NCBI GenBank assembly: GCA_002269645.1
Contig: NIVC01000921.1
Location: 248,001 to 312,000 of the forward strand
Direction of reading: 5' to 3'
Length of the DNA stretch: 64,000 nucleotides
DNA from: Macrostomum lignano
Taxonomy: Eukaryota
Below the pieces are notes generated by a model, which worked only from the letters and a program-made list of their open reading frames with translations, did not search any database and was not told the origin of the DNA. The position numbers and the translations under genes are program-made. Below are positions 28,145 through 64,000 of this stretch, in pieces (the first letter of the stretch is position 1; each line of letters opens with the position of its first letter).

Positions 28145-31100
28145 TTAATTTAGCGAATCCACAATTTGCCGCAGGGAGTCCGCAGCGGACTCTGCACTCG
28201 GACGGGAGTCTGGAGTGCCGCTCCAACAGCGCTCCATCAGGCTCCAGAGCTGGTCGGGCATGCCCGGCAGCCGCTTGGGTCGGCGGTCCTGGGCACCGGG
28301 TAGCTGGATTGGCCCGAAGCTGGGCAGGAGCTCAACGTACTCCGGGTGGCGCCTGCCAGTGCCTTCGCTGCGGGAATCGGGGTAAATGGGGGGCATCGGT
28401 GTATAGAGAGCTGCACAGTAGGATGGACAACAAACGCAAACGCTATTTAGTTAGGCCAAGAAGTTTTCCCTCCGGCACTGTTTTTAGTGGTTATTACTTA
28501 CAACCTCAAGATTTTCATAGTAGATGGATGTTTAAAAAGGCTATGCATTTATTTAGCTAGTCTTGGTGTGACATACCCTTCAAATTGCCTAGAAGAGGTT
28601 TGTAGCCTAGTGGAAGGAGTTTTAACCTAGTGGTTAGAGCGTCTGACTCACGACTGAAAGGTCGGGGGTTCGATTCTCGACTCCAATCGGAACAATACGT
28701 GTCCTTGGGCAAGGCACTTAACTCTGCATTGCTTCAGTTCACCCAGCTGTAAAATGGGTGCCAGCATTAGCTGGGGTAATTGAGGGTGTGTGTGGCGACC
28801 CCATAATGATATACATTGGACTGAACAGCCGTACGCAGCCTTCAGATGCGCCGCTCAATAGCTGCGGCTGAGTGGTTGCACATCTGGCCATTAGGGCAGG
28901 TGTAATCAATTATTACGACTTATTACCCTCCAAAGAGGCACCTTACTCACAACAAATACCAAAGAGCAATTCCAAGACTGAAGACATCAGTGCTCGCGTC
29001 GGGACTGGACCTGCCTGTGGCAATCTCTGGCGCTAAGTAGACCGGAATGCTGGTCGTTTGCTGGTTGTTATGGCTGTAGCACTTCACTATCCCGAACGGC
29101 GCTAGCTTCACCTTGTTCAAATCTTCGTTAACCTAGAAGAATAATTCGAGCCAATTTCAAAGCAAGAAAGCCAAGCTTTTAACGCATGTACAAAAATAGC
29201 TCGTCGATTTTCATACCCAAACATTGCTCAGTGCAACATCCTGATGAACGAGCTCGCTGGAGTGAAGAAACTGCAGAGACGTCGCAATCCGTAAGCCGAT
29301 CTTCAAGCGCTGTTTTACGGGCAGGCTGTAGCGCTGCATCAGAGTCCAGGCGTCGCAGAGCATCAGCTCCATGTAGATCTCCACCGTGTACCAGTTCTCT
29401 TCCGGCCGTCTCTTGTGCAGCCGCACGCCGACTACATGAACCAGATTTGGATGCTCAAAAGCGCTGGAATGATACGGCATAAAAATCGATATTCATGCAT
29501 AATGCAGACTGCAATGTTCAGAAAAAAATTGTGAATTTTTATTATTTTTAAACTGGTCATAAGAAGACCTGTCAAAAGTTATTCATTTGTGAGATTATTT
29601 GAAATGGACGCCCGAAGTACACAGTTCTTTAAATAAGAGTAAGTCTTTTTAATTTCGACTTTTGACTCGTTTCGTTTTAAGCACGTCTTCGAACGACCAT
29701 TCCAAAACAGGCTTTTTTTACCATAAATACATGAAGCTGCATTACCTGCTGTGGTACACCTCTGTCGCAATGTCGTCCAGACTAGTTTCACAGGAAATTA
29801 TCCTTTTAGCTGCGAGCGTTGGCTCGCCGATCTCATTCAAAACTCGAAACATATCGCATTGAGCCGCAGATCCAAGCTTTCCTTCCGTGTCAATTCGAAA
29901 TCCGCGAAACTTGTACTTTGAGGTAACATCCATCGTAAGCAGGTGAAGTCGAGCGACTCTCGGGTAAAGAGCCTTGATATCGGATCGCTCTTTCTCGGTC
30001 AGCTTCATGGATTTTTCGACCAGCTGTTCCGATGACGTGATTTTTTCGACGAACTCCCTGTGCTGGTTTTCGAACCACCCATTTAGTGAAGTGATGAGGC
30101 AGTCAACGAGATTTTCCTTGCTGACTGAACCTGCAATTATACATTTGCATGTAAAAATAGCGCTTCAATCATTTCTTTACGTAACTTATCATGGAAAGGC
30201 AATCGAAAAGTACAATAAAATCAAGATCCCAAGAGCGAATAGCAAAGCACGCCATGAAAACCCATTGTTTCAAAGATGTGAAAAAACTCACTAAGATAGA
30301 CATCTGCTTGATATTCCTTCCACCTTTCATCTTCAACAGGAGTAGACATTGACAGTACAAGACCTGGATTCTTCACTATTAGCTTGATGAAGTGCTTCAT
30401 CTTTCTGAGGATAATGCTAAAAGGACCCAGCATAAAGTCCTTCGAAGACAACGAGTAGCCCACGAGCAGCGTCTTCTTCAACACCTGGTACGCAGGCGTC
30501 TGTTCCACATCCTTCTCGTACTCTGCGACTACCTGCTTCAAACGATCGAAATCGTTTTGACAAGTCTTCAGAGCCCCATCCTTGAGGAAGTCGCAGAATG
30601 ACGCAATTATTCTGTCGTTGATGAGAGCATGAATCTCATCGACGCACTTCTTCTCAATGTCTTTCTGAGACATATCGGCTGAAATCACCGATTCCGAGTA
30701 CTTCAGCGCTCTGACTTCGTCGAGAATGAGCGGCTTTCTTTCGGCGAAGAATAGACCTGCTTGTCTCAACAGCTCGTCTCGATTTTTCTCCACGATGCTC
30801 ATCGACTGCTGGTAGGTCTTCTGCTCCAAGCTCTTGACTTGGTAGAGCGCCTTCTTCTTGCGCAAGTTCGACTCTTTGATGTTGGTGGCCTTGTCCATGA
30901 ACAGTGTGAGAATCTCGCTTTGAATGCGCCTCAGGCCGCCACCAGAACTCACGATGAGGTTTCGAAATTGATCCTGAGCGAACTTGAGAATTCTCGTCTT
31001 GACCTCCTCGAATCGTCTGACCCACTTTGAGTTCTCCATCTCCTTGAGAGCCTCAGGGTCGAGCTTGTTCTTCTTGATCATGAGTTCCTTTTTGCGACGG

Positions 31101-32346
31101 AATCGCCTCACTTCCCAACACGAGACGCAAAGGAACTTGTTGCATGTGTCTCTGGTTTCGTTCGGGCTGATGTAGCCGAGACGCTGCAGCTTAGAGAAGA
31201 CGCGCTCAGCCTTTTCTTCTTCAATCTGCTCCGTTGTGCTTGATGATTCTACCGCTGTTTCTCTGGACACATCCATCTTGGTAATTAGATAGAAAACCTC
31301 AGCTCCAATCTCTGGGAGTTGAATTGCTTTCAAATCTTTCTGGACCTAGGAATGTTTTTCATGTATTTTAGTTCGCAGAAAGTGCGAATTTGATTTGCAC
31401 TGTATTATTACGGGTATTTGAAAGTGCCTCGTGAACAAAAGACCTTACGGCAATTGTGATGCCCGAGTTCGAGTCGATGACGTAGATGATTATCGGTAGA
31501 AACGAGTCGATCGCCCCCAGCGTCAGCGAGTCCAGAGACGAGTTCTCGTTCAGTCCTGGCGAGTCGATAATGTCGATGCCGTGTCGCAGGAACTCGCACT
31601 TGATGCCGGCCTCGACAGTCGAGCTGATGAGCTCATCATTTTCGCGGTCCTCGTCCTTCAGCTTGACGAGGTCCTCCTCGATTGTCGGCTTCTCGAGGTA
31701 CTGGACGTCTCCGATCTGCTCGCCGGTCTTGGATCGCACGAGCACGTAGATTCGGTCGGAGTAGGTGAGCCGGGTGACTCGGGCGGTGCACGGGGACTGC
31801 GACTGGGCCACGAAGGTGCCGCCTAGGAAATACTTGAATCAATGTATATAAAAAACATAAACCTGGTCTCAATGTTTAACTGCAACACATTAGTTCGGGC
31901 TATATGCTGAGTGTGTTCTAGATGGGAGCATTCAGCTTCCTATCATGCGAACATATTTTGCCAGTCTGTATCCTGGGTTTAACTCTCAACTTACCTAAAA
32001 GCTCATTGATGAAGGAGCTCTTGCCCGACTTGGTTTGCCCAACAATGATGATGCACGGCTTGCTGTCATCCTTGGAGCCGGTCTCGTTGCCTCGGTACAG
32101 CCGCTTGATGGCTTTCGTCAGTGTCGGCAGTTGAAGCTTTTGCTTGAGCTCCTCGGATGACTCCACAGACAGGCTGCTGGCGATGGGGCCATCCAGCAGA
32201 GCCTGGGTGCTCTCCAGCTGCTCACGGATCAGGTCGCGGTTGATGTGAAACTCAGAAATTTCTTTCTCCAAAGAGTCAACATCCGACATGGCTAATGCGT
32301 TTTGGAACGACAATTTTAAGCTTTCATTCTTTACCGGTCTAAACAT
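28145..32346 (-). CDS. DSTYK: DSTYK-like dynamin-type GTPase-pseudokinase fusion, paralogue A (about 920-940 aa, 7 exons)
   Basis: Exons 31995-32289 (or from ATG 32346), 31449-31822, 30292-31345, 29746-30130, 29217-29463, 28951-29132 and 28145-28367 all join in frame to a TAA. GTPase motifs: G1 GQTKSGKS, G2 PCT, G3 DSPG, G4 TKMD. The kinase fold has degenerate motifs GSAAQC, HQDVALSN and KLAPFG. The symbol is family-level only. Confidence 0.88.
28601..28925 (+). mobile_element. tRNA-derived CORE-type SINE in intron 6 of paralogue A (antisense to the gene)
   Basis: A-box AGTGGTTAGAGC and B-box GGTTCGATTCT, then GTCCTTGGGCAAGGCACTTAAC...CTGTAAAATGGG (28701-28758), which resembles the MIR/CORE domain. 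Confidence 0.75.
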
Positions 32347-32894
32347 GCAGCTGCGGGTCCTGTAAAATGACCATGGCCTCCTTTATCAGGTCTGCTAGCG
32401 GTCTGGGCAGGATAGGAGCTGCAGTGTACAGCAAAGATGCAGCACTCTGAGGTTGTCGGTACAGTTAGTGCTGATAAACAAGACAGTAATTCCAGCACTT
32501 GCTTGTTATAATATTTTAGTGCTGTATTTAACATACAGTGAGCTGACGAATCGATCTGGAGCTTTGCCACTAACTACGATGTATGCATGTACAATGCATG
32601 TACTCAGCATCTAGCAAGACTGCTGTTTCCGCTTGTCCTTCAAGCTGGTATGCACAAGCTTAACGAGACTTTGCATAATCATGACTGTGCAAAGGACTGC
32701 ATAACTGATAGCTGGCTCTGTTTCCAGGTTGGATACTGAATTGAAGAAATATTTTATGCATCTGAATTTGAACCAGCCAACGCAGTCAAGTGCAGATCTT
32801 AGAGATGGTCGAAAATTTCATGGCAGCAACAGTTCACGCTCTTGCCAACAAATAGCCCACCGAAGTTAGGCCTGCCCATCTTCTAAGCGGGACG

Positions 32895-33309: not shown

Positions 33310-35790
33310 ATTAACTGCTTCGCTTGCTGCGGAGCAGACGGTCCCGCTGATGCGGCAAGCGCAGAAATCGCTGCCTGTCTGGCAGAGCGACCCGACCATC
33401 AGGCAGGCGCGCTCAGGCAGTGACGCTGAAGATGCGTTTGAGCGCTTTCTAGACGAGCGGCAGCAGGCCGCTATCGACGACACCGTCCGGACCATCACTG
33501 CAGCCGGCCCCGAAGTGAAGAGCCGTGCAGTTTGGACAGCCTTTCGGACTCTAACGCCACGGGTGCAGAAAGCCCGTGGCACTGAATCTGGTCGGTGACA
33601 CCCCGGAGGAGCGCAGGAATGAATTGCGCGACTTCTTCGCCGGCATCGTGAACGCGCCTGCGTCGCCGCTGCCCACCAGCTTTTCGCTCCCACTGGACAC
33701 GCCGGTCCCAGCTGAGGAGGACTTCTGCACAAGCCCAGTCACCAAAGAGGACGTTGTGCTGTTCGCTCGGAAATCACCAAGCGGCAAGGCGCTCGGCTCC
33801 GCTGTGTGGCCTCCCAGGTCGCAAGCGTCATGAACCGCGTGCTCGCCGGCGCCCCTGCATCCACCGAGTGGACTGTCGCGCACAACATGCTGATCCCGAA
33901 GAAGGCAGGGACAACGCGGAAAGAAGACCACCGCGGGATCTCGCTGATGTCCTGCACCGCGAAGCTCTTCAACCGGCTGCTGCTCGATCGTCTGCAGTCT
34001 GTGATGGACCCGTACCTGCGGGGTACGAGCAGAACGGATTCCGGTCGCAACGCAGTACACTGACACAGATCCTCGCACTCCGCAGTATCATCAAAGAGGC
34101 GCGCATCCGCCAGTCTACGCTGATCATGTCTTCGTTAACTTTCGAAAAGCGTTTGACTCAGTGTTGAGAGACGCGCTTACCTTTGTCCTTCGAGCAGAAC
34201 GAGTCCCGCAGCAGCTAATCGACGCTGTCGATACTGAGATACTCGAGCTGCTGTGGTGACGGCGGACGGCCTGTCTGACCTGTTCGACACCTCATCAGGA
34301 GTTCTGCAGGGCGACGCGCTAGCGCTGTTCCCCTCTCTCTCTGAACCGCACGTCCCGATGTCAGCCGGGCTGCGAGGGACGGGGCGCTAGATGCGCCCCA
34401 GCCTGCAAAGTAGGTCGATGGTCGTTTTCGCGTCCGCCAGAAGGGCATCTTGCTCGCTGGGGCGGGCCGCGAACCCTCTTGGGCAGCCAAACAGGATGTT
34501 GTTGCTCGGTGTCACGTGCTCCGCAGTCCGGGCACACGTCGGAGTCGGACAGGCCGAGCCGGAATCTGGTGGCGGCGGCGAGGTTGCTGCAGCCGGCACG
34601 GAGCTGGTTGACCAGGACCTCTAGTCTCCTCAGGAGGGCTGGGAGCTTTGGCCACGAGCGTTGCGGCCCCAAAGCTCGAGATCTAGTTTTCGTCTTTTGG
34701 CATGGCAGCCAGGTAAGCACTGGCTGTCATGAGGGGCGCGTCATGATTGCTCTGATCAGCGGTCGCCAATCTAGCCGGCCTGTCTGCGCGTTCATTCATG
34801 GGGATGCCGCAGTGAGCCGGGATCCAGGTGATGCGGATGGAGTGTCCGTTACTCTGGTTCCAAATTTCGGATACGAGCCGGCTGTTGCTGCGCTGGCCCG
34901 CCATGATGCTGTGAATGGCCGCCTGGGAGTCGGTGAAAATGTCGATACATTGATGTTCTCTAGTATTCTGAATGGCCAGCAGGATGGCTTGTAGCTCTGC
35001 CTGGGTGCTGCTGCAGATATTCCCTGCAGCGCTGGTGACGACCCGGCCCCAGGATGGAGTGATGATCACCGCTGTAGTCGGTCCAGACGCTAATCGGGTG
35101 GGAGCCGCGCTCCTCGAGGTACCTCAGTGCTGTTGCGCTGCGGAGAGCGCCGTTCCTCTTCGTGCTGCTGCTGGACTGGGTTCACCTACCTCGGCGGTCT
35201 GGTACTCCACGTGGTGAAAGTCCTCCGGCGGCGCAGAGGACTTGCCTGGGTGACCTTCCGTTCGATCCGAGCCGTCCCTCAGTCCGAAGCGCTGCCCGAC
35301 CGCCAGACAGCTCGGCTATGGTAGGCGATGGTCGAAACCATCCTGCTATACAACGCCGAGACGTGGACGCTGACGGCTACGCTAGAGCGGCAGCTGGACT
35401 CGGCACACCCAGGGCTGCTCCGTGCGGCCTTTCGAGCTGACGAGAGCGTCGAGACCGAGGCCCTGTACGATCGGGCCAAGCTGCGGCGCCCGTCCATCAT
35501 CCTGCGCCGGCGGCGACTTCAACTGGCGGGCCACGTGATCCAGGCCGAGGGCTACTGCCCCCAACCTGTTCAGGACGTCCTGCTGCTCACCTTGCAGGGT
35601 CCGCTCATTCGGGGTCAGGCCCGACCTGGACTGCCTGCTATGCAAAGCAGGGGCGCCCGACACTGCCAATGGGGCGAACTTTGTCCGCTCTCAGGCTCTG
35701 CGGCGCTCCATCTGACGCGCCCTACTCTCACTGGGAGGCTGCATGCGAGCAAGCTGCGTATTTTGTTAGTGCTGTTGTTTGTTTTACAGT
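33310..35790 (+). mobile_element. RTE-clade LINE relic (copy 1), 5'-truncated, interrupted by an antisense RNase H fragment
   Basis: IPKKAG..HRGISLMSCTAKLFNRLLL, NFRKAFDSV, GVLQGDALA, FTYLGG and ETILLYNAETWTLT, with a (TTG)-rich tail. Frameshifted. Confidence 0.8.
34332..35150 (-). mobile_element. 3' fragment of an RNase H-bearing LINE (I/Ingi-like) nested in RTE copy 1
   Basis: STQAELQAI, IFTDSQAAI, ITWIPAHCGIPMNERAD and CPDCG motifs, with a (GA)n tail on the minus strand. The right boundary is approximate. Confidence 0.75.
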
Positions 35791-36300
35791 GCCAATTCAG
35801 AAAAGGCCTTAATAACGAGTGCGTCCTTCGCGAGCAAGACAGAAATTCTTCGCGGCATCCCCGGAATGAGGCACCGCAAAAATCTTGAGGAAGACTTTTG
35901 GCGCAGGCCTGGCGCAGTTGCATGACATTGTGTGGCGGATTCTCTTACACTCTCATTCTCAAAGTGAGGTCCGAGAGAAGCTGCTTGCTGGCGCAAAGGA
36001 TGGCGACTTCAATGTTGCTGAGTATAGCTACAGATAATACTGGAAAAATCACCAAAAGACTTGCACACTGCTCATTAGTATAGACTCTTCGGTTTGATTT
36101 TAACAAAAAGGCTTCACAAAATACACTTGGAAATATGTTAAAGTGTTGGTGTGGCGTTCATTCGCGACCTGGCCTTGAAGCGCGCCCTCTTCTGTCTGTT
36201 GAGTATGCGTATTCGTATTCTGTTGTCTGTTGTGTTCACCCCAAGTTAAGTTGGTCAACAAATGGCAGCTTTAATCCTTTCCTTTGCTTCAGTTTCTCGC

Positions 36301-39300
36301 TTTCTCGCTCAGTCTCTCGGGGGAGGTCTGCACCCTCTATTTGCCGCTGGCAGCCGAAGACCCCCCCCACGCTGTTTCGCAAGCCGACCCAGGGGTACCC
36401 GTCCCCGCGAGTATTCAAGGCAGACCCTAGGGCTGCCGGACAGACTAGGCTCCAGAGAGCGGCGCTCCCTGGAGATGCTGCTGTGGCTGCTGAGGCCGAA
36501 ACCACGGTGCAACAAATGGCCACTGCCAAGAAGGAGGTTCCTTCGGGAGCTACCTTTGCGGCGAAGGCCAAGGCCTAAATCCCGGGAGTGATCATTCAAG
36601 GTCGCGACCAGGACTGGACCACTGATCAGCTTCAAAAAGTGTGGAGTGCTATTGACTCCTATCTGATTGAGCTGACTGTCGAGGAGGGAATCTCCATCGG
36701 CATTGAGCGGATTGAGGCCAGCGTCCAAAGACAATACCCTATGTGGTTTTGTCCCTGCAAAGAGCACCGCAACTGGACCAGACGTTATTCGCCGGGTCCT
36801 ACTGCGCCTGAATCCCGACCTCCCTGCTAGTGGACTGGTGTATAACCGTGGAGGGGGGGGAGCGGGCAAATCAATCGTCCTCGGCCTTTCCAACGCTTGG
36901 GCGAGTCGGTACCCTAATGGATCCTCTTTCCAGCTGGGTGCCCTCAAGCTCAAGATGCGCCGAGGAAAGTCTGCCAAAGGGAAGGCTTCTGCCAATCCCG
37001 GCATCTCCGGCAAGAGCGGGGCGCAGTCTAAGGCCCAAGGAAAGGCGCAAGCCGATCCCAAAGCCGGAGCTGCGTCTCGCCTCTCTGCTAGCAGCAATTC
37101 GGCGACCGCGGTGACGGCTCCGACCAAGCCCCGGGAACCGAACCTGCCAGCCGGAGAAGGAGTTGAGGACGAGGCCGGGTCTTCGGAATCCGAGCTCTCC
37201 TCGGCCACCCTGGTGGGGTCTGAAGGCAAAGATGCAGGTGAAGAAAGCTTCCTCCATCCTGTCATCGGAGCCCGAGGACTCTGCTGGGGGGGGGGGGCTG
37301 GTGGGGGTGAGGAGGCCATGGACATCGACCAACTCCCATCTCCCAGTCAAGCCCCAACGGCCTGGGATGAGGACGATTTGCTGTCCAAGTCTCCTTGATG
37401 GCCCGGGGCTCTAATCAGATTTTGCATTTAATACAGTATGACTAAGCTCCACGCCGCCAAAGGAGCGACATTCTGTCTGAAAATTAATTTACAGCATTGC
37501 GTATCTGCGTCAGTAAATCTGATGAAGATTGCTGAGCTGTACAGGCCAGGCTTCATCCTGATCCAGGAACCCTGGATGCGCAACGGTAAGTTGCCCAACA
37601 TTCCTTCTGGCTACTCTGATTTTTATGTGTGTGGCCCGTGGAACAACCGCCCTAGAGCGGCTATCCTCGCTGCTAGCCATCTCCAGGCTTGGCTGAGGAC
37701 TGATCTTTCAGATGGAGACCTTTGTGTCATCCAATCTAATCATCTCTCTCCGCGGACGTGTCTCGTTGCTTCGATTTATATTCCAAGCGACAGAGACCCT
37801 GCACCTGAGAGTCTACTGCGCCTTGCGCAGTACTGCGAGTCCCAGAACGCTGAGCTGTGCTTAGGGGGCGACCTCAACGCACACCATAAGCACTGGGGCA
37901 GCAAAGACACCAATACTAGAGGGGAGGAGCTTCTGGCCCTTATCTCTAACACAAACCTCATGCTCTGCAACCGCGGTAGCACTCCTACCTTTAACAATGG
38001 CAGATGGACTGAGGTTCTCGATGCCACACTCGTTACCCCAAGACTCTGACATAGTTGAGGAGTGGAGAGTCTAGTCTGAGGAGCCCTCCCTGTCTGACCA
38101 CTGCTTTATCGCCTTTAACATCGCGGACACTAAACCCCAGTCCCCGATCACTTGGAGGCGTAATATCCGCAACACTGATTGGGCAGCCTACAAGGCTACC
38201 CTTGATCTGCACCTGCAGGAACTCACGAACTCACGTACGATTGAGACCTGCGAGGATGTGGACCATGCGGCTGAGACGCTGACAGGTTGCATTATTGCAG
38301 CCTATGAAGCGGCCTGCCCTGTCCGTGCCTACAAAGGCAAGACCTCGGCGCCGTGGTGGAACCCGGAGCTGGGGAAACTCAGGCGGAAGGCCAAAAGCCT
38401 TCACCGCCGTGCCATGAAGACCGGAAACCCGGAGGACATGGAGCTTTTCCGACAAGCCTCCCGAAACTTCCAATCTGAAGTGCGCAAGGCCAAGGAATGC
38501 AAATGGCGCCAATTCTGCAATGAGTTGGACCAAGACAGACCCTCGTACTTCTAGGCTTGTCAAGGCCCTTACAATGGACAAAATGTCCAAATTAGCCATG
38601 ATCAAAAAAGATGATGGCTCTCTTACTAAAGACCCTGAAGAAGTGCTTCAGCATATGCTCAGCACATTCTTCCCGAGGGTACCCACTGCTAGATCGGAAC
38701 CCAACCATTCAATGGATGGAGCCACCCTAGCGGCGGGCATTATCACTGAAGACTTAATCGCTCGTGCGGTCAGAACCTTCAAGCCCTTCAAATCTCCTGG
38801 ACCTGATGGTATCTACCCTGTTCTTCTTCGTGAAGCAGCCAAGATACCCTCGTTCTTGAGACTTAAGCGCAATCTCATGACAGCCTCTATCCAGCTGGGA
38901 TACGTTCCCAAGTGCTGGACCGAAGCTCGGGTAGTCTTCATTCCAAAGCTGGGAAGGGTGACTACCAGAGCGTCAAGGCCTTTAGGCCAATTAGCTTAAC
39001 GTCAGCAATGCTTAAGCTGACTGAGAGGCTTATTCTCTGGCGGCTGCTTTCATGCGAGCTGACAGAAATGCCCCTCAGCAATCATCAGCACGCCTTCCGT
39101 AGCGGGAGGTCGACTGACAGCGCCCTGCATGCGATAGTCGAGAAAATTGAACGGGCGGTACTGGGTGACGGTGCGTTTCAGAGGGCCCTTCAAAATCGCA
39201 AAGCTCATGCTACCCTCATACGGTGGATCATGTACATGATCTCTAACCGTGCGGTCACTGCCCAACTTCTTGGGCAGTAAGGGTGGACCCCAAGGCGGAG

Positions 39301-41184
39301 TCCTCACCCCGACACTCTGGAACCTGGTCATGGACGCTCTTCTGGGTGACTCCCGACCTGATCCCGTCTTCAAAGTCGGGTATGCTGACGACGTCACTGC
39401 TATTGTGGCTGGGCCGTCCCCCAGCACGCTCAGGGATCTGATGCAGAGCTTTATCCGCAAAGCAGAATCCTGGGCCAATGACAACGGTCTGGAACTCTCT
39501 GAGCCCAAAACTGTTGCCATTATGTTCACCAGCAGAATACGCTGGAACATACGACCTCTGCAGCTATACGGCAGAGATATTGCCTTCGCGCACCAGACCA
39601 GATGTCTCGGGGTCATACCTGACCACCGACTCAACTGGTCCTTCCACGTGGAAGCAAAAGCCAAGCGTGCCTCAGCCATCCTGGCCCAGCTCCGTCGAGC
39701 ACTTGGCACTTCTTGGGGTCTATCCCCAAAGCGGCTTTGGTGGATCTACACTTCCGTAGTTAGACCTGCCATTACGTACGCCTCGGTTGTCTGGGTTAGC
39801 GCTACCCAGGTCAAAAGCCATGCAGATTTGCTCAACACGATCCAGGGCAGAGCGTGTAGGCTTATCTGCAACGCCACCAGGTCCACGCCCTTCGCCTTTA
39901 CGGCATGGGGTCTTCCTTAATCTACCGCCTCTCGACTTCTTCGTCAGGGGTGAGGCGGCTAGAACGACGCGGCGTTTACTTGATGCCGGTGTCAAATTCC
40001 TTTACATGAGGGCACCTGCTAAGCGGAACCTCGGCCCGCATAGCGACCTTCGCCTCAAAATTCTCAAAGAGTGTCAGGCCAATCGCGTCTTCACCGATGG
40101 CATTGCCTCAACGCTCAACCTGAGACAACGCTACTCCGTAGCTATCGACTCGCGCGATACCATCAATGACCACTGGAACCCTGGTGAGCTTCACTGCTAT
40201 ACCGATGGTTCTAAGAAGTCAGCCAACACCGGTTTTGGCGTTGGAATCTTCCTGAACGGGAGGGTTATCGCAACCCACGCTCAGTACACTGGGGTCAACT
40301 CCAGTGTCTTCCAAAATGAAGTTCTCGCCATCACTGCAGAGCTTCTCGCCACTGGCGTAACCGGTAAGAACATCATTTTCCATTCGGACAGCCAAGCTGC
40401 CTTGCACGCCATCAGTGGCTGTAGTACAAATTCTGCTACAGTCCTCGACTGTATCAAACTCCTCAACATGTTGGCTCCACCAACAAAATCACCCTTAAGT
40501 GGGTTCCGGGGCATGTGATGATCCGAGGAAATGAGTTGGCTGACGCCCTTGCGAAAGTTGGCGCCTCCGGCTCCTCTATCGGTCCCGAACGCCTTGTCTC
40601 GATTCCTGGCTGTGTCATCGACTCGCGCATCAAAGCGTGGATCAGGACCCAGCACCGCTCGACTTGGGCGAACTGCACTACCTGCAGGCAATCCAGAGGC
40701 GCTGTCCCTCAGCCCTCTCACCAGCTCCGGAAGCTCCTCTTACGCCTCTCGCGCAGAGACATCCGGGCTGCCACCATGACCCTCTCAGGTCACGGCTGCT
40801 TCTCCAGGCACCAGTACCTGCAGGGCAATGCCACCAACGCCATCTGCAGTTTCTATAACTCAGGTGACGAAACCGCTGAACATTTCGTCCGCATCTGTCC
40901 CGCCTTTACGCGAGCCAGACTCACTTACCTCGGGCCACACACATCTATTACTGAAGCGTGCAAACCCGAAACCTTTAATCAGCTCATGCGCTACCTCTGG
41001 GCAACCCGCAGGGCTGAACTCTCCTTTCTAGAGAGAACCATAGCTGCTGGCGACACTGGAGGACCTCCCTGAGCGGCGCCAACCCTTCGTCCATAGCGAC
41101 GCGTCGGCCGTTCAGGAATGGGCGTTCGCGCCTTCCCGCTGTGTCCCCCGGGACAGCCCTGCAGCTAAGTCAAGTAAGTCAAGT
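36301..41184 (+). mobile_element. Non-LTR retrotransposon, LOA/Lian-like (ORF1 + APE-RT-RNase H-zinc knuckle), decayed
   Basis: ORF1 fragments at about 36500-37398. ORF2 37438-41072 is split by stops and frameshifts. APE: IQEPW, GGDLNAHHKHWGS. RT: [28 protein letters not shown]. RNase H: YTDGSK, HSDSQAAL, GNELADALAK. C-terminal knuckle-like motif. (AAGT)-type tail at about 41167-41184. The clade assignment is inference. Confidence 0.88.
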
Positions 41185-41934: not shown

Positions 41935-44900
41935 CTAAGACTCCAGCGAGTCCACAATCTTCTGCAGGGATTCTACAGCTTCCTCCGCTGTCGGTCTGGA
42001 GTCTGGGGTGCCGCTCCAGCAGCTCTCCATCAGGTCCCACAGCTGGTCGGACATGTTGGGCAGCCGCGTCGGTCTGCAGTCCAGGGCGCTGGCGAGCAGG
42101 ATGGCCCCGACACTGGGCATGATCTCGACGTACTCCGGGTGGCGCTTGCCCGTGCCTTCGCTGTGGATTTAAATCAATGGCATCTCGCATCAATCGCTCG
42201 AGAATCTCTGTCAGCTCGTCCGCTACCTAAGGGCTACCGGCTGAGTGATCATCCACATCTTTGACTCTCCGGGGGCCGCGCTGCAAGACATCTAGCATTC
42301 CAACTCTCGTCTGCAGTGCGGCCCTCTATCGGGAGGCATTCCCGGAGGCACTGTAGAATTCCTAACGAGCTGTTACCCCCTGTAGATGTTCTATAACATC
42401 GCGCAATCTTTTTTGAACTTACAAAAGATACCAAAGAGCGATTCCAAGACTGAAGACGTCCGCGCTCGTGTGGTAGCTCTCGCCTCGGACCAGCTCAGGC
42501 GCAAGGTAGATTGGCGTTCCAACTAAGGTTCGGTTTACAAAGCCTGTACTCTTCACGAGTCCGAAGTCCGACAGCTTCACTTGTCTTAAATCTTCACTCA
42601 CCTGAGGGTTTTTAAGGTGTTGTGAGCTGTTAAAATCATAAAAAACAGTCGGTCCACTCTCAAAAAAATGCTTACGAGGACGTTGGCGAGTTTCAAGTCT
42701 CTGTGAATCAGCTCGCTCGAGTGAAGGAACTGAAGGGCCTTCGCCAGCTCCAAGCCAATCTTCAGGCGCTGTCGAACGGGCAGCCTGTGGCGCTGCATTA
42801 GATTCCAGGCGTCGCAGCACATCAGCTCCATGTAGATCTCTACTGTCCATCGCTTCTCATCAGGTTTGCTTTTGTGGAGCCTCACGCCGACTACGTGCAC
42901 GAGATTATCATGCTCGAGAACGCTGGAATGTAACAACTTCTCATGCTATTATGAGAACTAGAAGTTATGCGATCGAAATATGTGTACTATATCTACTCAA
43001 GTATAGTAACTTACCTGCTGTGGTACACTTCCGTTGCGATATCGTCAAGACTAGGCTCGTCGGATACGATTCTCTTGGCCGCTAGCGCTGGCTCTCCGCT
43101 CTCGTTCAAAACTCGGAACACCTCACCTTGCGCTCCGGATCCGAGATTTCCTTCCGTGTCGATTCGGAACCCGCGGTACTTGTACTTGGAGATAACATCC
43201 ATCGTAAGCATATGCAGTCGAGCAACTCGTGGGAATAGAGACTTGATCTCGGATCGCTCCTCCTCGGTCAGTTTCATACCGCTTTCAACTAGCTGCTCCG
43301 ATGAAGCAATGTTGTCAAGAAACTCTCTGTGCTGCTTTTCTAACCATTCCTTCAGCCAGGTGATGAGGCGCTCGACAAGAATGTTTTTGTTGATTGCCTC
43401 TAAATCAGAAAATGTCAAAAAATAATTTAAAACTGTACGAGCTACAAGTACGAGCTACTTCGACCCTCTATACCATAGAAAACTACAATTTCTGAAATAT
43501 ACAGTACGTGTACTTACCTAGATACTTTTCTGCCTGATATTTCTTCCACTTTGGATCCTGGATCGGTGTCGAGGTTGAAAAAACGAGCCCTGGTTTTGTA
43601 ACTATTTTTATCACGAAAAATTTTATCTTGAATATTATAAAACCCAAACAACTCAGTTTCAATTCCTCCAGCGACACCGAATAGCTCATGAGCATTGTCT
43701 TCTTCAACACCTGGTACGCGGGCGTCGGATTCACATCCTTCTCCAACTCCGCCATTAGATTCTTCAAGTCGAAGCCCTTAAGGCCATGATTCTTGAAGAA
43801 GTCGAAGAATGAAGCAATTATTCTGTCGTTGATGAGAGCATGAATCTCATCGACGCACTTCTTCTCAATGTCTTTCTGAGACATATCGGCTGAAATCACC
43901 GATTCCGAGTACTTCAGCGCTCTGACTTCGTCGAGAATGAGCGGCTTTCTTTCGGCGAAGAATAGACCTGCTTGTCTCAACAGCTCGTCTCGATTTTTCT
44001 CCACGATGCTCTTAGACTGCTGGTAGGTCTCCTGCTCCAGGCTCTTGATTTGGTAGAGCGCCTCCTTGCGCAAGTTCGACTCTTTGATGTTGGTGGCCCT
44101 GTCCATGAACAGTGTGAGAATCTCGCTTTGAATGTGCATCAGTTCATCACCAGACCTCACGATGAGGTTTCGAAATTGATCCTGAGCGAACTTGAGAATT
44201 CTCGTCTTGACCTCCTCGAATCGTCTGACCCACTTTGAGTTCTCCATCTCCTTGAGAGCCTCAGGGTCGAGCTTGTTCTTCTTGATCATGAGTTCCTTTT
44301 TGCGACGGAATCCCCTTACTTTCCAACACGAGACGCAAAGGAACTTGTTGCATGTGTCTCTGGTTTCGTTCGGGCTGATGTAGCCGAGACGCTGCAGCTT
44401 AGAGAAGACGCGCTCGGCCTTCTCTTCTTCAATCTCCTGCGCTGGTTGATTGGCTTCCTGCTCTGTGTCTTTCGAGACATCCATCTTAGTGACAAGATAG
44501 AACACCTCAGCGCCAAGCACCGTTTTCTTAATCGTTGTTAAGTCCTTTTGGACCTGCAGTTTTAGTATTTCAGTGGAAGAATATAATTTCAACAGAATTG
44601 CTAACAGAAATATAGAGTTTTCTCTGGATTCCTTTCACACCAATTATTATTAATGATCATAGATTGTACGATAGCCGCGAGCCACAATACATTATTAGAA
44701 GTCTGAAATTTTTATTAGAACTTACGGCAATGGTGATGCCCGAGTTGGAGTCGATGACGTAGATGATGATCGGTAGAAACGAGTCGATCGCCCCCAGCGT
44801 CAGCGAGTCCAGAGATGAGTTCTCGTTCAGTCCTGGCGAGTCGATGATGTCGATGCCGTGTCGCAGGAACTCGCACTTGATGCCGGCCTCGACAGTCGAG

Positions 44901-45895
44901 CTGATGAGCTCGTCATTCTCGCGGTCCTCGTCTTTCAGCTTGACGAGGTCCTCCTCGATTGTCGGCTTCTCGAGGTACTGGACGTCTCCGATCTGCTCGC
45001 CGGTCTTGGATCGCACGAGCACGTAGATTCGGTCGGAGTAGGTGAGCCGGGTGACTCGGGCGGTGCACGGGGACTGCGACTGGGCCACGAAGGTGCCGCC
45101 TGCGAATATCGAGCGCATTTTGTATTATGAAATTATGCATGGTCCTGGTTTTACTGGCTCAAAGATACTCATCAGCTACCGGATTTTCTTTTAAGTGGAA
45201 TCTGAGCAGCAAAACTAAGCTTGCTGTGTGTACAGTGATTTCTACGAATTTGAAAAAATATTCTGTCCTCACGTGAGAAGAATATTCATCTATCTTTTTG
45301 CAGGAGTGCAAAATGGTATTTAATTTTTTTGTAATGCTAATCAATGCATTGGGAGTTTTTTGCATGTTATATCAACTTATTCGGTGAATTTCCATTGAGA
45401 GAAATGAAATTAAACTTCAATTATATCAAATTTACTACTGTAAGTAGACAACAATTCGTGGTTCCTGCTGAGCAGATCTAAATGAATTTTATGGATACAA
45501 GCTTGAGAAATGAAAAAAAAACATTGACAGCGCTGACATTGACAGAATTTTATTTAACAAAAGTTAAACAGCTGCTCACCCAGAAGTTCATTGATGAAGG
45601 AGCTCTTGCCCGACTTGGTCTGTCCAACAATGATGATGCACGGCTTGCTGCTGTCACTGGAACCCGTCTGGTTGCCCCTGTACAGCTGGTTCACCTTTTG
45701 TCTCACGTCTTCAAATTTTAGCGACTCTTGCAATTTTTCTGAGAATTCCGGAGACAAAGCCTTCGAAAAGCTTTCCGTTAACAGTCTCTGCGTAGTGTCC
45801 AGGTGCTCTTTGATCAGGTCCCGGTTGCTTCGGAATTCGGCGAGTTCCTGGTCCAGAAAGCCGATCGGCTGCGCCTCCGCTTGCGAGATGGCCAT
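41935..45895 (-). CDS. DSTYK: DSTYK-like dynamin-type GTPase-protein kinase fusion, paralogue B (920 aa, 7 exons)
   Basis: Exons 45580-45895, 44726-45099, 43518-44553, 43015-43399, 42676-42922, 42423-42601 and 41935-42160 total 2763 nt in frame. G1-G4 are intact. Kinase motifs GSGAQG, LAAK, HRDLKLAN, DFG, GTPIYLAPE and DVFSLG are intact. The symbol is family-level only. Confidence 0.9.
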
Positions 45896-47224: not shown

Positions 47225-48800
47225 GCCAAGCTTATCAAGCGCAGTAATCCTTTGTTTGCCAAGTGCAATAACCCTTGATTTATCAAGTGCAGAAATCCTT
47301 GGTTTATCAAGCGCAGTAATCCTTAGCTTATTAAGTGCAGCAATCCTTGGTTTATCAAGCGCAGTAATCCGTGGCTTATCAAGTGCAATAATACTTGGCT
47401 TATCAAGTGCAATATTCCTTGGTTTATCTAGTGCAATATTCCTTATTATCAAAATGCAATAATCCTTGGTTTATCAAGCGCAGTAATCCTTAGCTTATCA
47501 AGTGCAGTAATACTTGGCTTATCAAGAGCAATAATCCTTGGCTTATCAAGTGCAATAATCCTTGGCTTATCAAGTGCAATAATATTTGGTTATCAAGTGC
47601 AATATTCCTTGGTTTATCAAGTGCAATAATCCTTGGCTTATCAAGTGCAGTAATCCTTGGCTTATCAAGTGCAGTAATACTTGGCTTACCAAGAGCAATA
47701 ATCCTTGGCTTATCAAGTGCAATAATCCTTGGCTTATCAAGTGCAATAATATTTTGTTTATCAAGCGCAGTAATCCTTAGCTTATCAAATGCAGTAATCC
47801 TTAGTTTATCAAGCGCAATAATATTTGGTTTATCAAGTGCAATAATCCTTGGCTTATCAAGTGCAGTAATCCTTGGCTTATCAAGTGCAGTAATACTTGG
47901 CTTATCAAGTGCAATAATCCTTGGCTTATCAAGTGCAATATTCCTTGGTTTATCTAGTGCAATATTCCTTATTATCAAAGTGCAATTATCCTTGGCTTAT
48001 CAAGTGCAGTAATCCTGGGCTTATCAAGTGCAGTAATCGTTAGTTTATCAAGTGCAATAATATTTGGTTTATCAAGTGCAATAATACTTGGCTTATCAAG
48101 TGCAATAATCCTTGGCTTATCAAGTGCAGTAATCGTTGGTTTATCAAGTGCAATAATATTTGGTTTATCAAGTGCAATAATACTTGGCTTATCAAGTGTA
48201 GTAATCCTTCGATTATCAAGTGCAGTAATCAGTGGCTTATCAAGTGGAGTAATCCTTGGCTTATCAAGTGCAATAATCCTTGGCTTATCAAGTGCAATAT
48301 TCCTTGGTTTATCTAGTGCAATATTCCTTATTATCAAAGTGCAATAATCCTTGGCTTATCAAGTGCAGTAATCCTTCGCTTATTAAGTGCAGTAATCGTT
48401 AGTTTATCAAGTGCAATAATATTTGGTTTATCAAGTGCAATAATCCTTGGTTTATCAAGTGCAATAATCCTTGGTTTATCAAGTGCAATAATCCTTGGTT
48501 TATCAAGCGCAGTAATCCTTGGTTTATCAAGTGCAATAATCCTTGGTTTATCAAGTGCAATAATCCTTGGTTTATCAAGCGCAGTAATCCTTGGTTTATC
48601 AAGTGCAATAATCCTTGGTTTATCAAGTGCAATAATCCTTGGTTTATCAAGTGCAATAATCCTTGGTTTATCAAGCGCAGTAATCCTTGGTTTATCAAGT
48701 GCAGTAATCCTTGGCCTATCAAGTGCAGTAATCCTTAGTTTATCAAGTGCAATAATTTTTTGTTTATCAAGTGCAGTAATCCTTGGTTTATCTAGCATCA
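47225..48800. repeat. 24-bp minisatellite TTATCAAGTGCAATAATCCTTGG(T/C)
   Basis: Period 24; the source of the RIIALDKP repeat ORFs. Confidence 0.95.
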
Positions 48801-49946: not shown

Positions 49947-55204
<5,258 letters not shown>

Positions 55205-58390: not shown

Positions 58391-58533
58391 CAGTGCCAAT
58401 TCAGAAAAGGCCTTAATAACGAGTGCGTCCTTCGCGAGCAAGACAGAAATTCTTCGCGGCATCCCCGGAATGAGGCACCGCAAAAATCTTGAGGAAGACT
58501 TTTGGCGCAGGCCTGGCGCAGTTTCATGACAAT

Positions 58534-58727
58534 GGGCCGTATGCAGAAAGCTTGGTCCAGACTAGCTAGTCCGGACTTGGGTAGTTCAGTCTATGGTCTA
58601 TGGTCTAGCTGCCCTAGTTCTGTCTATAGTAGACCAGTCTAACTTTGTGTTTCTGCACACCAAATCCAAGTCCAGACTAGCTTTTCAAGACCGGAATACC
58701 CTAGACAGAGCTTTCTGCATACGGCCC
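58534..58727. mobile_element. MITE with perfect 19-bp TIRs (PIF/Harbinger-like)
   Basis: TIRs are GGGCCGTATGCAGAAAGCT and AGCTTTCTGCATACGGCCC, flanked by AAT/ATT. The paralogous site near 35925 is empty (atgacattgtgtgg). Confidence 0.8.
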
Positions 58728-63200: not shown

Positions 63201-63608
63201 TGATAGAATTATGCCAGTTTGTAATGGAACTCACGGCAACGGTGATGCCCGAGTTCGAGTCGATGACGTAGATGATGATCGGTAGAAACGAGTCGATCGC
63301 CCCCAGCGTCAGCGAGTCCAGAGACGAGTTCTCGTTCAGTCCTGGCGAGTCGATGATGTCGATGCCGTGTCGCAGGAACTCGCACTTGATGCCGGCCTCG
63401 ACAGTCGAGCTGATGAGCTCATCATTCTCGCGGTCCTCGTCTTTCAGCTTGACGAGGTCCTCCTCGATTGTCGGCTTCTCGAGGTACTGGACGTCTCCGA
63501 TCTGCTCGCCGGTCTTGGATCGCACGAGCACGTAGATTCGGTCGGAGTAGGTGAGCCGGGTGACTCGGGCGGTGCATGGGGACTGCGACTGGGCCACGAA
63601 GGTTCCGC
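60238..63608 (-). CDS. DSTYK: DSTYK-like dynamin-type GTPase-protein kinase fusion, paralogue C (exon 1 lies beyond the window end)
   Basis: Exons 63235-63608, 61822-62875, 61309-61693, 60970-61216, 60717-60895 and 60238-60463 have the same phases as B. DSPG, TKMD, GSGAQG, HRDVKLAN, DFG and APE are intact. 63630-64000 is homologous to intron 1 of B (45120-45495). Confidence 0.88.
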
Positions 63609-64000
63609 CTGCGAATATCGAGCGCATTTTTTGTTATGAAATTATACACATTGTCCTGGTTTTACTGGCTCAAAGATACTCATCAGCTACCGGATTTTCT
63701 TTCAAGTGAAATCTAAGAATCAAATCTAAAGTGTGGACAGGGATTTCTAGAAGTTTGTCTTCAATTTGAGGAGAATATTATTCTCCAAATAAAATAGTAT
63801 TATTTTTGAATGAAGATTTGGGCATTAATGCTTGTCAAGGCATTGGGAAAAATTTTGCTAGTTTAGCTCAGATAATCTGTGTTCTTATTGGGTGAATATC
63901 CTTTGAGAGGAAAATTAACATTCATCTATATCTTGTATACTACTGGAAGTAGACAACAATTTGCTGTTCCTTCGTAGCAGATCTAAATGGATTTTATCTA

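What the first reader, a model, noticed from the sequence alone, without database searches (positions are those of the whole stretch)
28145..64000. Tandem cluster of dynamin-like GTPase-kinase fusion genes pairing active kinases with a pseudokinase
Seen: three co-oriented paralogues with the same exon architecture (7 exons in A and B; exons 2-7 of C), each encoding a P-loop GTPase (G1-G4 intact), a long helical stalk and a kinase. B and C look catalytic; A does not. Known: this architecture is that of DSTYK, generally single-copy in well-studied animals. Dynamin-superfamily GTPases oligomerise on membranes, and several (Mx, GBP, bacterial DLPs) act in cell-autonomous defence. Kinase/pseudokinase pairs serve as sensor-executor modules in plant and animal immunity. 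Inference: this could be an undescribed polymorphic GTPase-gated kinase signalling or defence locus, in which subunits co-assemble through a shared GTPase core and differ in their stalk tips and kinase output.
Basis: partly seen in the sequence, partly recalled or inferred. Interest (0 to 1): 0.85.

Follow-up and report, generated by a model that had tools for sequence, protein, structure and literature searches.

The report
Flatworm DSTYK-family GTPase-kinase gene cluster
The window holds three of five clustered Macrostomum lignano copies of DSTYK, a human disease kinase, and these copies keep an intact dynamin-like GTPase that the human protein has lost; one copy has a dead kinase, and the GTPase core is kept nearly identical between copies by gene conversion.

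Summary
Three co-oriented minus-strand genes have clean GT-AG models: A 28145-32346, B 41935-45895, and C 60238 to beyond 64000. Each encodes a Dynamin_N GTPase, about 400 aa of helices and a kinase. B and C keep the catalytic kinase motifs. A has lost the DFG aspartate, the catalytic-loop lysine and the glycine loop.

The window is Macrostomum lignano contig NIVC01000921.1. B and C are existing transcript-derived GenBank proteins, which UniProt names DSTYK. C aligns end to end with human DSTYK (E=6e-55; profile 4e-95). Human DSTYK has lost G1-G4. The N-terminal 650 aa fold like the bacterial dynamin-like protein BDLP.

The cluster has five genes; D and E lie just outside the window. It exists in about three assembly copies and is a lineage-specific expansion. 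Saccoglossus has a similar five-gene array.

New here is that divergence is mosaic. Exon 2 (GTPase core) and mid-exon 3 are homogenised: silent differences are 3% there against 36% elsewhere. The stalk-tip segment and A's kinase stay divergent.

A defence role is untested and has no direct support. Hetero-oligomerisation through a shared G domain is plausible but inferred.

Verdict: new members of a known, annotated family, with an interesting evolutionary pattern.

The parts
28145..32346 (-). Gene A: a 7-exon DSTYK-family gene of 938 aa with an intact GTPase, a helical stalk and a pseudokinase (GSAAQC, HQDVALSN, APFG).
   Evidence: Splice model; Pfam; motif table. It matches the mis-spliced UniProt model P0006. 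The exact 938-aa sequence is not in the protein collection, so its transcription is unverified.
41935..45895 (-). Gene B: a 7-exon gene of 920 aa with an intact GTPase and a catalytic-looking kinase (HRDLKLAN, DFG).
   Evidence: Splice model. The product is identical to GenBank PAA74830.1, BOX15_Mlig023032g1. That annotation is transcript-derived (PMC5730564).
60238..64000 (-). Gene C, exons 2-7. The full protein is 926 aa, and exon 1 lies just beyond the window end. It has an intact GTPase and a catalytic-looking kinase (HRDVKLAN, DFG).
   Evidence: 100% identical to P0001 = PAA74831.1, BOX15_Mlig021056g2. The AF2 model has mean pLDDT 82.
31449..31822 (-). Exon 2 of A, the GTPase core from switch I through G3. 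It is a homogenised tract. The equivalent exons are B 44726-45099 and C 63235-63608.
   Evidence: 97-98% nucleotide identity between paralogues, ending at the exon edges. dS is 0.05-0.09, against 1.0-1.4 in exons 1, 4, 5 and 6. The same exon in D' on contig 677 is 97% identical to B.
43789..44418 (-). Central exon 3 of B (about aa 276-485, stalk helices), the second homogenised tract. The approximate equivalent in A is 30578-31210.
   Evidence: Sliding-window pS is 0-0.12 here against 0.4-0.9 in the flanks. The longest run without a silent difference is 85-92 codons, permutation p<=2e-4.
43518..43803 (-). 3' end of exon 3 of B (about aa 481-575), the divergent 'tip' segment with a hydrophobic or amphipathic 22-residue stretch. 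Equivalents are A about 30292-30592 and C about 61822-62122.
   Evidence: B-C identity is 72-82% here, against 96-100% in the rest of the coding sequence. Protein p-distance is 0.28-0.47 among A, B and C. AF2 pLDDT is below 50 at C residues 530-565. Hydrophobic moment is 0.60-0.63 in A and C; B has mean hydrophobicity 0.62.
28145..30130 (-). Exons 4-7 of A, the pseudokinase domain. The HQDVALSN motif is at the end of exon 5 (29217-29463) and APFG is in exon 6 (28951-29132).
   Evidence: Motif table. dN/dS is 0.13-0.40 against B, with no stops or frameshifts despite dS of about 1. The A branch is about twice as fast as the B branch.
33561..41072 (+). Degraded non-LTR retrotransposon material between A and B (endonuclease, RT and RNase H fragments).
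   Evidence: ORFs; Pfam Exo_endo_phos and RVT_1; 95% identical copy at 56154-58534.
50380..54431 (-). Near-intact LINE between B and C: a 252-aa ORF1, an endonuclease-like ORF, and a 760-aa RT plus RNase H ORF.
   Evidence: ORFs; Pfam RVT_1 1.7e-20 and RNase_H 3.6e-12.

Best explanation
Shown:
- The region is part of a five-gene, lineage-specific tandem expansion of the DSTYK family in the flatworm Macrostomum lignano. The gene order is E, D, then head-to-head C, B, A. D and E lie just beyond the window.
- Each protein is a BDLP/mitofusin-type dynamin-like GTPase fused to a C-terminal protein kinase. The GTPase part is a G domain plus two long helical bundles, with a hydrophobic or amphipathic tip.
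- These flatworm proteins, like those of most invertebrates, keep the GTP-binding motifs that human DSTYK has lost.
- B and C (and D' on the sister contig) keep catalytic kinase motifs. A and E are pseudokinases that remain under purifying selection.
- Gene conversion keeps the G-domain core (exon 2) and the central stalk nearly identical among A, B, C and D'. The stalk tip, the N-terminus and A's kinase domain stay divergent.

Inferred mechanism:
- The proteins sit on endomembranes through the tip.
- They dimerise or oligomerise through the G domain in a GTP-dependent way, as BDLP and mitofusin do. This brings the kinase domains together for activation.
- Because the G interface is identical between paralogues, mixed assemblies are possible. 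The kinase-dead A and E subunits would then modulate output, and the different tips would specify different membranes.
For: Identity:
- The window is 100% identical to NIVC01000921.1.
- B and C are exact GenBank proteins that UniProt names DSTYK.
- C against human DSTYK: BLASTP E=6e-55 over 870 colinear residues.
- Family profile against human DSTYK: hhalign probability 100, E=4e-95.

GTPase part:
- Pfam Dynamin_N 5.5e-20.
- Best PDB sequence hit is BDLP 2j68, E=4e-14.
- AF2 model has pLDDT 82 and pTM 0.73. Its top Foldseek PDB hit is BDLP 2j69_A over 715 columns, E=1e-14.
- G1-G4 are intact.
- Human DSTYK has no Dynamin_N hit even at E<=1, and its motifs are degenerate.

Extent of the cluster:
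- D and E are on L001; C', D' and E' are on L002.
- A third copy lies on a 357-kb contig.

Lineage-specific expansion:
- The M. lignano paralogues are monophyletic, with 90.5% bootstrap.

Pseudokinases under constraint:
- Motif table.
- dN/dS of 0.13-0.40 with an intact ORF at dS of about 1.
- A second A-like copy (P0011) carries the same HQDVALSN motif.

Concerted evolution:
- Per-exon dS and sliding-window pS.
- Silent differences are 3.3% inside the tracts against 36% outside, with run-length permutation p<=2e-4.
- D' exon 2 is 97% identical to B's although the rest of D' is about 50% identical.
- The unlinked singleton P0010 is not homogenised.

Membrane role by analogy:
- Vertebrate DSTYK localises to late endosomes and lysosomes, and its overexpression drives their aggregation and fusion (PMC6981171).
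- DSTYK has been seen at autophagosomes and affects mitochondrial fitness (PMC9524203).

Recurrence:
- Saccoglossus has five DSTYK-like genes within 23 kb. Two or three of them have no Pkinase hit.
Against: - No biochemical, localisation or interaction data exist for any flatworm member.
- Transcription of A is not verified; its exact sequence is not among the transcript-derived GenBank proteins.
- Gene conversion could be a neutral by-product of tandem arrangement and high similarity. Its restriction to exons is expected once introns have diverged. It therefore does not by itself show selection for a shared interface.
- The tip's escape from homogenisation could be self-reinforcing divergence rather than selection.
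- The AF2 alignment is shallow (16 sequences). The global superposition on BDLP is poor (TM 0.28-0.36, rmsd 43 A), which is compatible with a different hinge state but is not proof of the same mechanism.
- D on this contig has lost exon 2, so not every copy is functional.
Confidence: 0.6

Rival explanations
1. Neutral tandem duplication. The cluster is ordinary gene-family turnover in a repeat-rich neopolyploid genome. The paralogues act independently and redundantly as DSTYK-like housekeeping kinases of the endolysosomal system. A, E and the exon-2-deleted D are copies on their way to loss or subfunctionalisation. Gene conversion is a mechanical by-product with no functional meaning.
For: - The assembly is highly redundant and TE-rich (PMC5730564).
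- LINEs fill the intergenic space.
- D on this contig has a frameshifting exon-2 deletion.
- A's kinase evolves about twice as fast as B's.
- All dN/dS values are below 1.
- Conversion confined to exons is what diverged introns would produce.
Against: - A's seven exons are intact at dS of about 1, with dN/dS of 0.13-0.40.
- The pseudokinase motif state is shared by a second A-like copy.
- Residual differences in exon 2 are all synonymous in A-B (dN = 0).
- The tip is the only coding segment left unhomogenised between B and C.
- Mixed arrays of kinase and kinase-less members recur independently in a hemichordate.
Confidence: 0.25
2. One reading: a cell-autonomous defence locus. Here GTPase-gated kinase oligomers sense or attack pathogens on membranes, with variable tips as recognition surfaces and pseudokinase subunits as decoys or sensors.
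For: - Tandem expansion with copy-to-copy structural variation.
- A divergent tip segment with the highest dN/dS in the gene: B-C exon 3 at 0.64 and exon 4 at 0.87.
- A kinase/pseudokinase mix.
- Independent expansions in hemichordates.
- From general knowledge, some dynamin-superfamily members (Mx, GBP, bacterial DynA) act in defence.
Against: - No infection-response or expression data could be found.
- No window reaches dN/dS above 1.
- The closest relatives are BDLP/mitofusin-type proteins, not Mx, GBP or IRG.
- The one studied family member works in lysosome biogenesis and autophagy.
- The synonymous rate is also raised in the tip, which points to older coalescence rather than positive selection.
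Confidence: 0.1
3. Assembly artefact: the three copies are haplotigs or mis-joined duplicates of one gene.
For: The Mlig_3_7 assembly is known to be redundant, and near-identical (98-99%) sister contigs exist.
Against: - A, B and C lie on a single contig, separated by different TEs.
- They have diverged or unalignable introns, and dS of up to 1.4 in several exons.
- They encode distinct GenBank transcripts.
- The sister contig carries the same multi-gene arrangement.
Confidence: 0.02

Closest known systems
[quoted passage not shown]
   Same: - Homology is end to end and colinear, from the P-loop position to the end of the kinase.
- The length is similar (about 920-930 aa).
- The order is the same: G-like domain, long helical region, kinase.
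- A conserved amphipathic stretch followed by an invariant Trp precedes the last helix.
- The kinase motifs are related (HRDxKxxN; WxLMxxCW).
   Different: - Human DSTYK has lost G1, G2, G3 and G4 (GQDCNVKCQ, SCKLR, VAPC, VPKLG). It gives no Dynamin_N hit.
- It is a single gene. The flatworm has at least 6 paralogue types, two of them pseudokinases.
- The flatworm genes are co-orthologues or paralogues, not a 1:1 orthologue.
- The papers I could read treat the DSTYK N-terminus as a 'non-catalytic region' or scaffold.
BDLP (Nostoc punctiforme bacterial dynamin-like protein) and mitofusin/Fzo-type fusion DLPs
   Same: - BDLP is the best PDB match by sequence (2j68, E=4e-14) and by fold (2j69_A, 715 aligned columns).
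- Both have a G domain followed by helical bundles, with a hydrophobic element at the position expected for the paddle.
   Different: - BDLP and mitofusins have no kinase domain.
- The flatworm proteins have no predicted transmembrane pair.
- Global superposition is poor (TM 0.28-0.36).
- Membrane binding and fusion activity are untested.
DSTYK-like tandem arrays of hemichordates (Saccoglossus, Ptychodera, Glandiceps)
   Same: - Saccoglossus has five Dynamin_N genes within 23 kb, with and without a recognisable kinase.
- Ptychodera and Glandiceps each have several copies on a single scaffold.
- G1-G4 are intact, and some members are pseudokinases.
   Different: - These are independent expansions.
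- The Saccoglossus genes are compact, at about 3.3 kb each.
- Whether their G domains are homogenised was not examined.
ROCO proteins (LRRK1/2): a GTPase and a kinase in one polypeptide
   Same: These are a functional analogy only. A G domain and a kinase sit in a single chain that acts on endolysosomal membranes, and dimerisation is linked to kinase output (general knowledge; for context).
   Different: The G domain is unrelated (Ras-like Roc-COR, not dynamin-like), the domain order differs and the family is different.
Kinase/pseudokinase partner systems (e.g. RIPK3-MLKL, JAK JH1/JH2)
   Same: An active kinase coexists with a related catalytically dead, constrained kinase fold.
   Different: In the flatworm cluster the partners are whole-gene paralogues. 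No interaction between them has been shown.

Membership tests
Dynamin superfamily (BDLP/mitofusin-type DLP) | A large GTPase domain that matches the family profile above the curated threshold. | tested here: met
   Pfam Dynamin_N scores 72.5 bits against a cut-off of 27 in both A and B. Best PDB sequence hit is BDLP, E=4e-14.
Dynamin superfamily (BDLP/mitofusin-type DLP) | G1 (GxxxxGKS), switch-I Thr, G3 (DxxG) and G4 ([NT]KxD) are present. | tested here: met
   GQTKSGKSS, PCTAR, DSPG and TKMD are present in A, B and C, and are invariant across the invertebrate family.
Dynamin superfamily (BDLP/mitofusin-type DLP) | A helical bundle or stalk follows the G domain and resembles that of a solved DLP. 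| tested here: met
   AF2 model of C has pLDDT 82. The top Foldseek PDB hit is BDLP 2j69_A, E=1e-14, over 715 columns, but TM is only 0.28-0.36.
Dynamin superfamily (BDLP/mitofusin-type DLP) | A membrane-binding element (paddle, PH domain or TM) at the stalk tip. | tested here: inconclusive
   A 22-residue stretch is amphipathic in A and C (muH 0.60-0.63) and hydrophobic in B (H 0.62). It lies in the low-pLDDT region 530-565.
Dynamin superfamily (BDLP/mitofusin-type DLP) | GTP hydrolysis stimulated by G-domain dimerisation; membrane remodelling. | not testable with these tools
   This needs recombinant protein assays.
DSTYK family | Full-length colinear homology with vertebrate DSTYK, covering both the N-terminal region and the kinase. 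| tested here: met
   BLASTP of C against human DSTYK gives E=6e-55, 23% identity over 870 aa. hhalign of the family profile against human DSTYK gives E=4e-95 over 850 columns. The human sequence was verified by exact look-up.
DSTYK family | A catalytically competent C-terminal kinase. | tested here: met
   B and C (and D') have GxGxxG, AxK, HRDxKxxN, DFG and APE. A and E' do not.
DSTYK family | A single 1:1 orthologue of vertebrate DSTYK. | tested here: not met
   Six M. lignano paralogue types form one clade, with 90.5% bootstrap in an NJ tree of the kinase region. They are co-orthologues or lineage-specific paralogues. The NJ tree has limited taxon sampling.
DSTYK family | Late endosome / lysosome localisation and a role in lysosome or vacuole biogenesis. 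| not testable with these tools
   This is known for zebrafish and human DSTYK (PMC6981171). No data exist for flatworms.
Pseudokinase (gene A) | Loss of at least one canonical catalytic residue (VAIK Lys, HRD Asp or DFG Asp). | tested here: met
   The DFG Asp is replaced by Pro (APFG). In addition, the catalytic-loop Lys is Ala and the HRD Arg is Gln (HQDVALSN), and the glycine loop is GSAAQC. The VAIK Lys, the HxD Asp and the Asn are retained.
Pseudokinase (gene A) | The kinase fold is retained under purifying selection, so this is not a decaying pseudogene. | tested here: met
   Pfam Pkinase scores 79.6 bits. The ORF is intact across exons 4-7 at dS of 0.5-1.2, with dN/dS of 0.13-0.40. The branch is about twice as fast as B's.
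Pseudokinase (gene A) | Absence of phosphotransfer activity; transcription of the gene. | not testable with these tools
   A's exact product is absent from the transcript-derived GenBank set. Supplement searches found nothing.
Innate-immunity GTPase or kinase-pseudokinase defence module | Positive selection (dN/dS above 1) at a recognition surface. | tested here: not met
   The highest per-exon values are 0.64-0.87 (B-C exons 3 and 4). In the tip, pS is raised as well. There are only three sequences, so no site model was run.
Innate-immunity GTPase or kinase-pseudokinase defence module | Induction by infection, or a defence phenotype. | not testable with these tools
   No paper links Macrostomum with DSTYK, and there were no supplement hits.

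The most novel reading that the evidence does not exclude
The DSTYK family as a whole may be a membrane-remodelling, BDLP/mitofusin-type GTPase that uses nucleotide-dependent G-domain dimerisation to switch on a fused kinase.

In Macrostomum, and independently in hemichordates, the clustered paralogues would form mixed oligomers. They would assemble through a G interface that is actively kept identical. Kinase-dead subunits and divergent membrane-binding tips would give combinatorial specificity. The system could mark organelle identity or act in cell-autonomous defence.

Vertebrate DSTYK would then be a derived pseudoGTPase remnant of this system.
Probability: 0.2. Interest if true: 0.75.

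Novelty: new member of a known kind. Interest (0 to 1): 0.5.

Why it matters
DSTYK is a human disease gene, linked to urinary-tract malformations and to spastic paraplegia SPG23. Its mechanism is poorly understood, and the papers I could search treat its N-terminal two-thirds as a non-catalytic scaffold.

The flatworm genes show that this region is a BDLP/mitofusin-like dynamin GTPase whose GTP-binding motifs are still intact in invertebrates. That fits the reported effect of vertebrate DSTYK on late-endosome and lysosome fusion.

It also gives a testable model in which a GTPase gates a kinase on membranes. M. lignano is a transgenic model organism, so the model can be tested there.

The exon-limited concerted evolution of the G domain, next to an unhomogenised tip and pseudokinase paralogues, is a clean natural experiment. 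It bears on which surfaces must stay compatible between subunits.

Tried and rejected
- A profile search meant to retrieve vertebrate DSTYK returned only three invertebrate proteins, because word-based candidate selection was swamped. I solved this by an exact look-up of the human sequence, which confirmed it as Homo sapiens DSTYK.
I used C (= P0001) instead.
B was confirmed through the cluster look-up; A was not found.
- Expression evidence: no paper links Macrostomum with DSTYK. The gene ids Mlig021056, Mlig014911 and Mlig016260 do not occur in the held supplements of PMC5730564 or PMC5816591.
- The original 'Dusty' family paper (PMC4277547) is not held.
- Literature searches for DSTYK together with dynamin, GTPase domain, pseudoGTPase, mitofusin or atlastin found no description of a GTPase-like domain.
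- I rejected the haplotig or assembly-artefact explanation.
- I rejected nucleotide-level purifying selection alone as the cause of exon-2 identity. The unlinked paralogue P0010 is saturated in the same exon (pS 0.6-0.7).
- The D' codon set was incomplete: 544 of 953 codons were unmapped. Only its exon-2 and terminal windows were used.

Full report
**What is in the window**

A self-comparison finds three paralogous blocks on the minus strand. From six-frame segments and the boundary sequences I built complete gene models in which every intron is GT-AG.
- A: 7 exons, 28145-32346, 938 aa.
- B: 7 exons, 41935-45895, 920 aa.
- C: exons 2-7, 60238-63608. Its exon 1 lies about 70-390 nt past the window end.

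The B model is residue-for-residue GenBank PAA74830.1. C is 100% identical to PAA74831.1.

**Domains and motifs**

Pfam finds Dynamin_N (72.5 bits, cut-off 27) and Pkinase in both A and B. The kinase score drops from 138 bits in B to 80 bits in A.

In a 25-sequence family alignment, A, B and C have intact G1 (GQTKSGKSS), the switch-I threonine, G3 (DSPG) and G4 (TKMD).

B and C have a full set of kinase motifs. A keeps the VAIK lysine, the HxD aspartate and the asparagine. It has GSAAQC for the glycine loop, HQDVALSN for HRDxKxxN, and APFG for DFG. A is thus a textbook pseudokinase by sequence.

**Source organism and existing annotation**

The window is 100% identical to Macrostomum lignano contig NIVC01000921.1 of assembly GCA_002269645.1.

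The GenBank annotation of that assembly was derived from an RNA-seq-based transcriptome (PMC5730564). B, C and D therefore have transcript support. A's exact product is not in the collection, so its transcription is open.

[quoted passage not shown] The database lists Dynamin_N plus kinase Pfam hits for them.

**Relationship to DSTYK**

I confirmed a human DSTYK sequence by exact look-up. C aligns with it colinearly from the P-loop position to the end of the kinase (E=6e-55, 870 columns). A profile of 14 family members aligns with it at E=4e-95.

Human DSTYK gives no Dynamin_N hit even at E<=1. At the aligned positions it reads GQDCNVKCQ, VAPC and VPKLG.

So the family is DSTYK. The human protein is a pseudoGTPase with an active kinase. 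The flatworm, nemertean, brachiopod, amphioxus, hemichordate and cnidarian proteins keep the GTPase motifs.

I found no paper that describes a GTPase-like domain in DSTYK. One calls the region a non-catalytic or scaffold domain.

**Kind of GTPase**

By sequence, the closest solved structure to the N-terminal 652 aa is the cyanobacterial dynamin-like protein BDLP (E=4e-14), with mitofusin a weak second.

An AlphaFold2 model of C has mean pLDDT 82 and pTM 0.73. Its top Foldseek PDB hit is BDLP over 715 columns. Every other hit in the top 50 is a kinase domain. The global TM-score is low (0.28-0.36). This is expected if the hinge state differs, but it limits the claim to 'same architecture'.

The only low-confidence internal stretch is residues 530-565. 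It holds a 22-residue segment that is amphipathic in A and C and strongly hydrophobic in B. I read this as the probable membrane-binding tip, as an inference.

**Extent and copy number of the cluster**

Upstream of C, head to head with it, lies D (653 aa as annotated, kinase only). Beyond D lies E.

A sister contig (NIVC01000677.1) carries C', D' (= P0007, full length) and E' (877 aa, Dynamin_N only; kinase motifs HGNLHAAN) at 98-99% identity. Relative to that contig, the window's contig has a 688-bp deletion that removes exon 2 of D.

A third copy lies on a 357-kb contig. A sixth paralogue type, P0010, is a singleton at an unlinked locus, and it too is present three times. This multiplicity fits the known redundancy of the assembly of this neopolyploid line.

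In NJ trees all M. lignano paralogues form one clade (90.5% bootstrap, kinase region). This makes the cluster a lineage-specific expansion.

Hemichordates expanded the family independently. Saccoglossus has five Dynamin_N genes in 23 kb, and two or three of them have no Pkinase hit.

**Mosaic divergence**

This is the main new result.

- Between A and B/C, dS is 1.0-1.4 in exons 1, 4, 5 and 6. It is only 0.08-0.09 in exon 2 and 0.32 in exon 3.
- Thirty-codon windows resolve two homogenised tracts. One runs from the P-loop through exon 2 (aa 96-215). The other covers the central stalk (aa 276-485). They are flanked by old sequence.
- Silent third-position differences are 3.3% inside the tracts and 36% outside. 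The longest run free of silent differences is 85-92 codons (permutation p<=2e-4).
- High identity stops at the exon-2 boundaries.
- D' is about 50% identical to B elsewhere but shares exon 2 at 97% nucleotide identity.
- The unlinked P0010 is saturated in the same exon.

The simplest explanation is recurrent gene conversion among the clustered genes, with purifying selection on top. All nine A-B differences in exon 2 are synonymous.

Between B and C, introns 1-3 are only 62-88% identical while the exons are 96-100% identical. The exception is the last 300 nt or so of exon 3, the tip, at 72-82%, which is the intron-level background. The tip is therefore the one coding segment that has escaped homogenisation.

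**State of A**

A's kinase domain has evolved about twice as fast as B's since they split: branch lengths are about 0.21 against 0.10. It has no stop codon or frameshift at dS of about 1, and its dN/dS is 0.13-0.40. A second A-like copy (P0011) has the same HQDVALSN motif. A is a constrained pseudokinase, not a decaying pseudogene.

**Interpretation**

Shown:
- The genes belong to the DSTYK family.
- The N-terminal part has BDLP-like architecture with intact GTPase motifs.
- The cluster mixes kinase and pseudokinase members.
- The expansion is lineage-specific.
- Divergence shows a conversion mosaic.

Inferred:
- The proteins bind membranes through the tip.
- They dimerise through the G domain on GTP binding, and this regulates the kinase.
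- The shared G domain allows mixed assemblies, in which A and E act as kinase-dead modulators.

The analogy with vertebrate DSTYK supports a membrane role. Vertebrate DSTYK sits on late endosomes and lysosomes, and it drives their aggregation and fusion when overexpressed (PMC6981171).

The defence idea is not excluded, but it has no direct support. dN/dS never exceeds 1, the raised divergence at the tip is also synonymous, and no expression data were found.

**Verdict**

As genes, these are new members of a known and already annotated family. The points of interest are these:
- the dynamin-like nature of DSTYK's N-terminal region, which is overlooked in the papers I could search;
- the opposite domain losses in different lineages: a pseudoGTPase in vertebrates, and pseudokinases in flatworm, hemichordate and cnidarian members;
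- the exon-limited concerted evolution of the G domain.

Noticed in passing
window 23465-25325 (+): An SHC-like adaptor gene lies here, with a PTB/PID domain (Pfam 9.6e-8) followed by an SH2 domain (4.7e-10). It has long polyQ runs and a 22-bp minisatellite (24443-24931) inside the reading frame. The unlinked family singleton P0010 also sits next to an SH2 gene (L003 1884-6663).
   Followed up: partly
L001 6132/6133 (just outside the window; equals contig NIVC01000921.1): Paralogue D, head to head with C, lacks a 688-bp segment that is present on the sister contig (L002 11132-11819). The segment contains exon 2, the GTPase core. Skipping that exon would shift the reading frame, and the gene is annotated as a 653-aa kinase-only protein.
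   Followed up: yes
L002 15842-20364 (contig NIVC01000677.1): Paralogue E' (877 aa) keeps the P-loop and G3 but has THMD at G4. Its kinase is degenerate (HGNLHAAN), making it a second, much older pseudokinase member of the cluster.
   Followed up: partly
window 50380-54431 (-); 33561-41072 (+); 56154-58534: Non-LTR retrotransposons fill the space between the genes. One is near-intact, with a 252-aa ORF1, an endonuclease-like ORF and a 760-aa RT plus RNase H ORF. Degraded copies are also present, two of them 95% identical to each other.
   Followed up: partly
window 900-27000 and 46900-48800: Minisatellite density is very high, with units of 12-64 bp. Examples are a 16-bp unit x145 at 11606-13936, a 20-bp unit x60 at 8654-9838, and a 24-bp unit x65 at 47232-48792. 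Together these make up roughly a third of the first 27 kb.
   Followed up: no
L004 (Saccoglossus kowalevskii GL016403.1: 54362-77636): Five DSTYK-like genes are packed into 23 kb on both strands, each only about 3.3 kb long. Two have Dynamin_N and Pkinase, one has Dynamin_N and PK_Tyr_Ser-Thr, and two have Dynamin_N only. This is an independent tandem array with the same mix of kinase and kinase-less members.
   Followed up: partly
window 42450-43300 compared with 60750-61600: B and C are 95-100% identical from mid exon 4 to exon 6, including introns 4 and 5. Introns 1-3 are only 62-88% identical. This points to a separate, recent conversion tract that spans the kinase exons and their introns.
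   Followed up: partly
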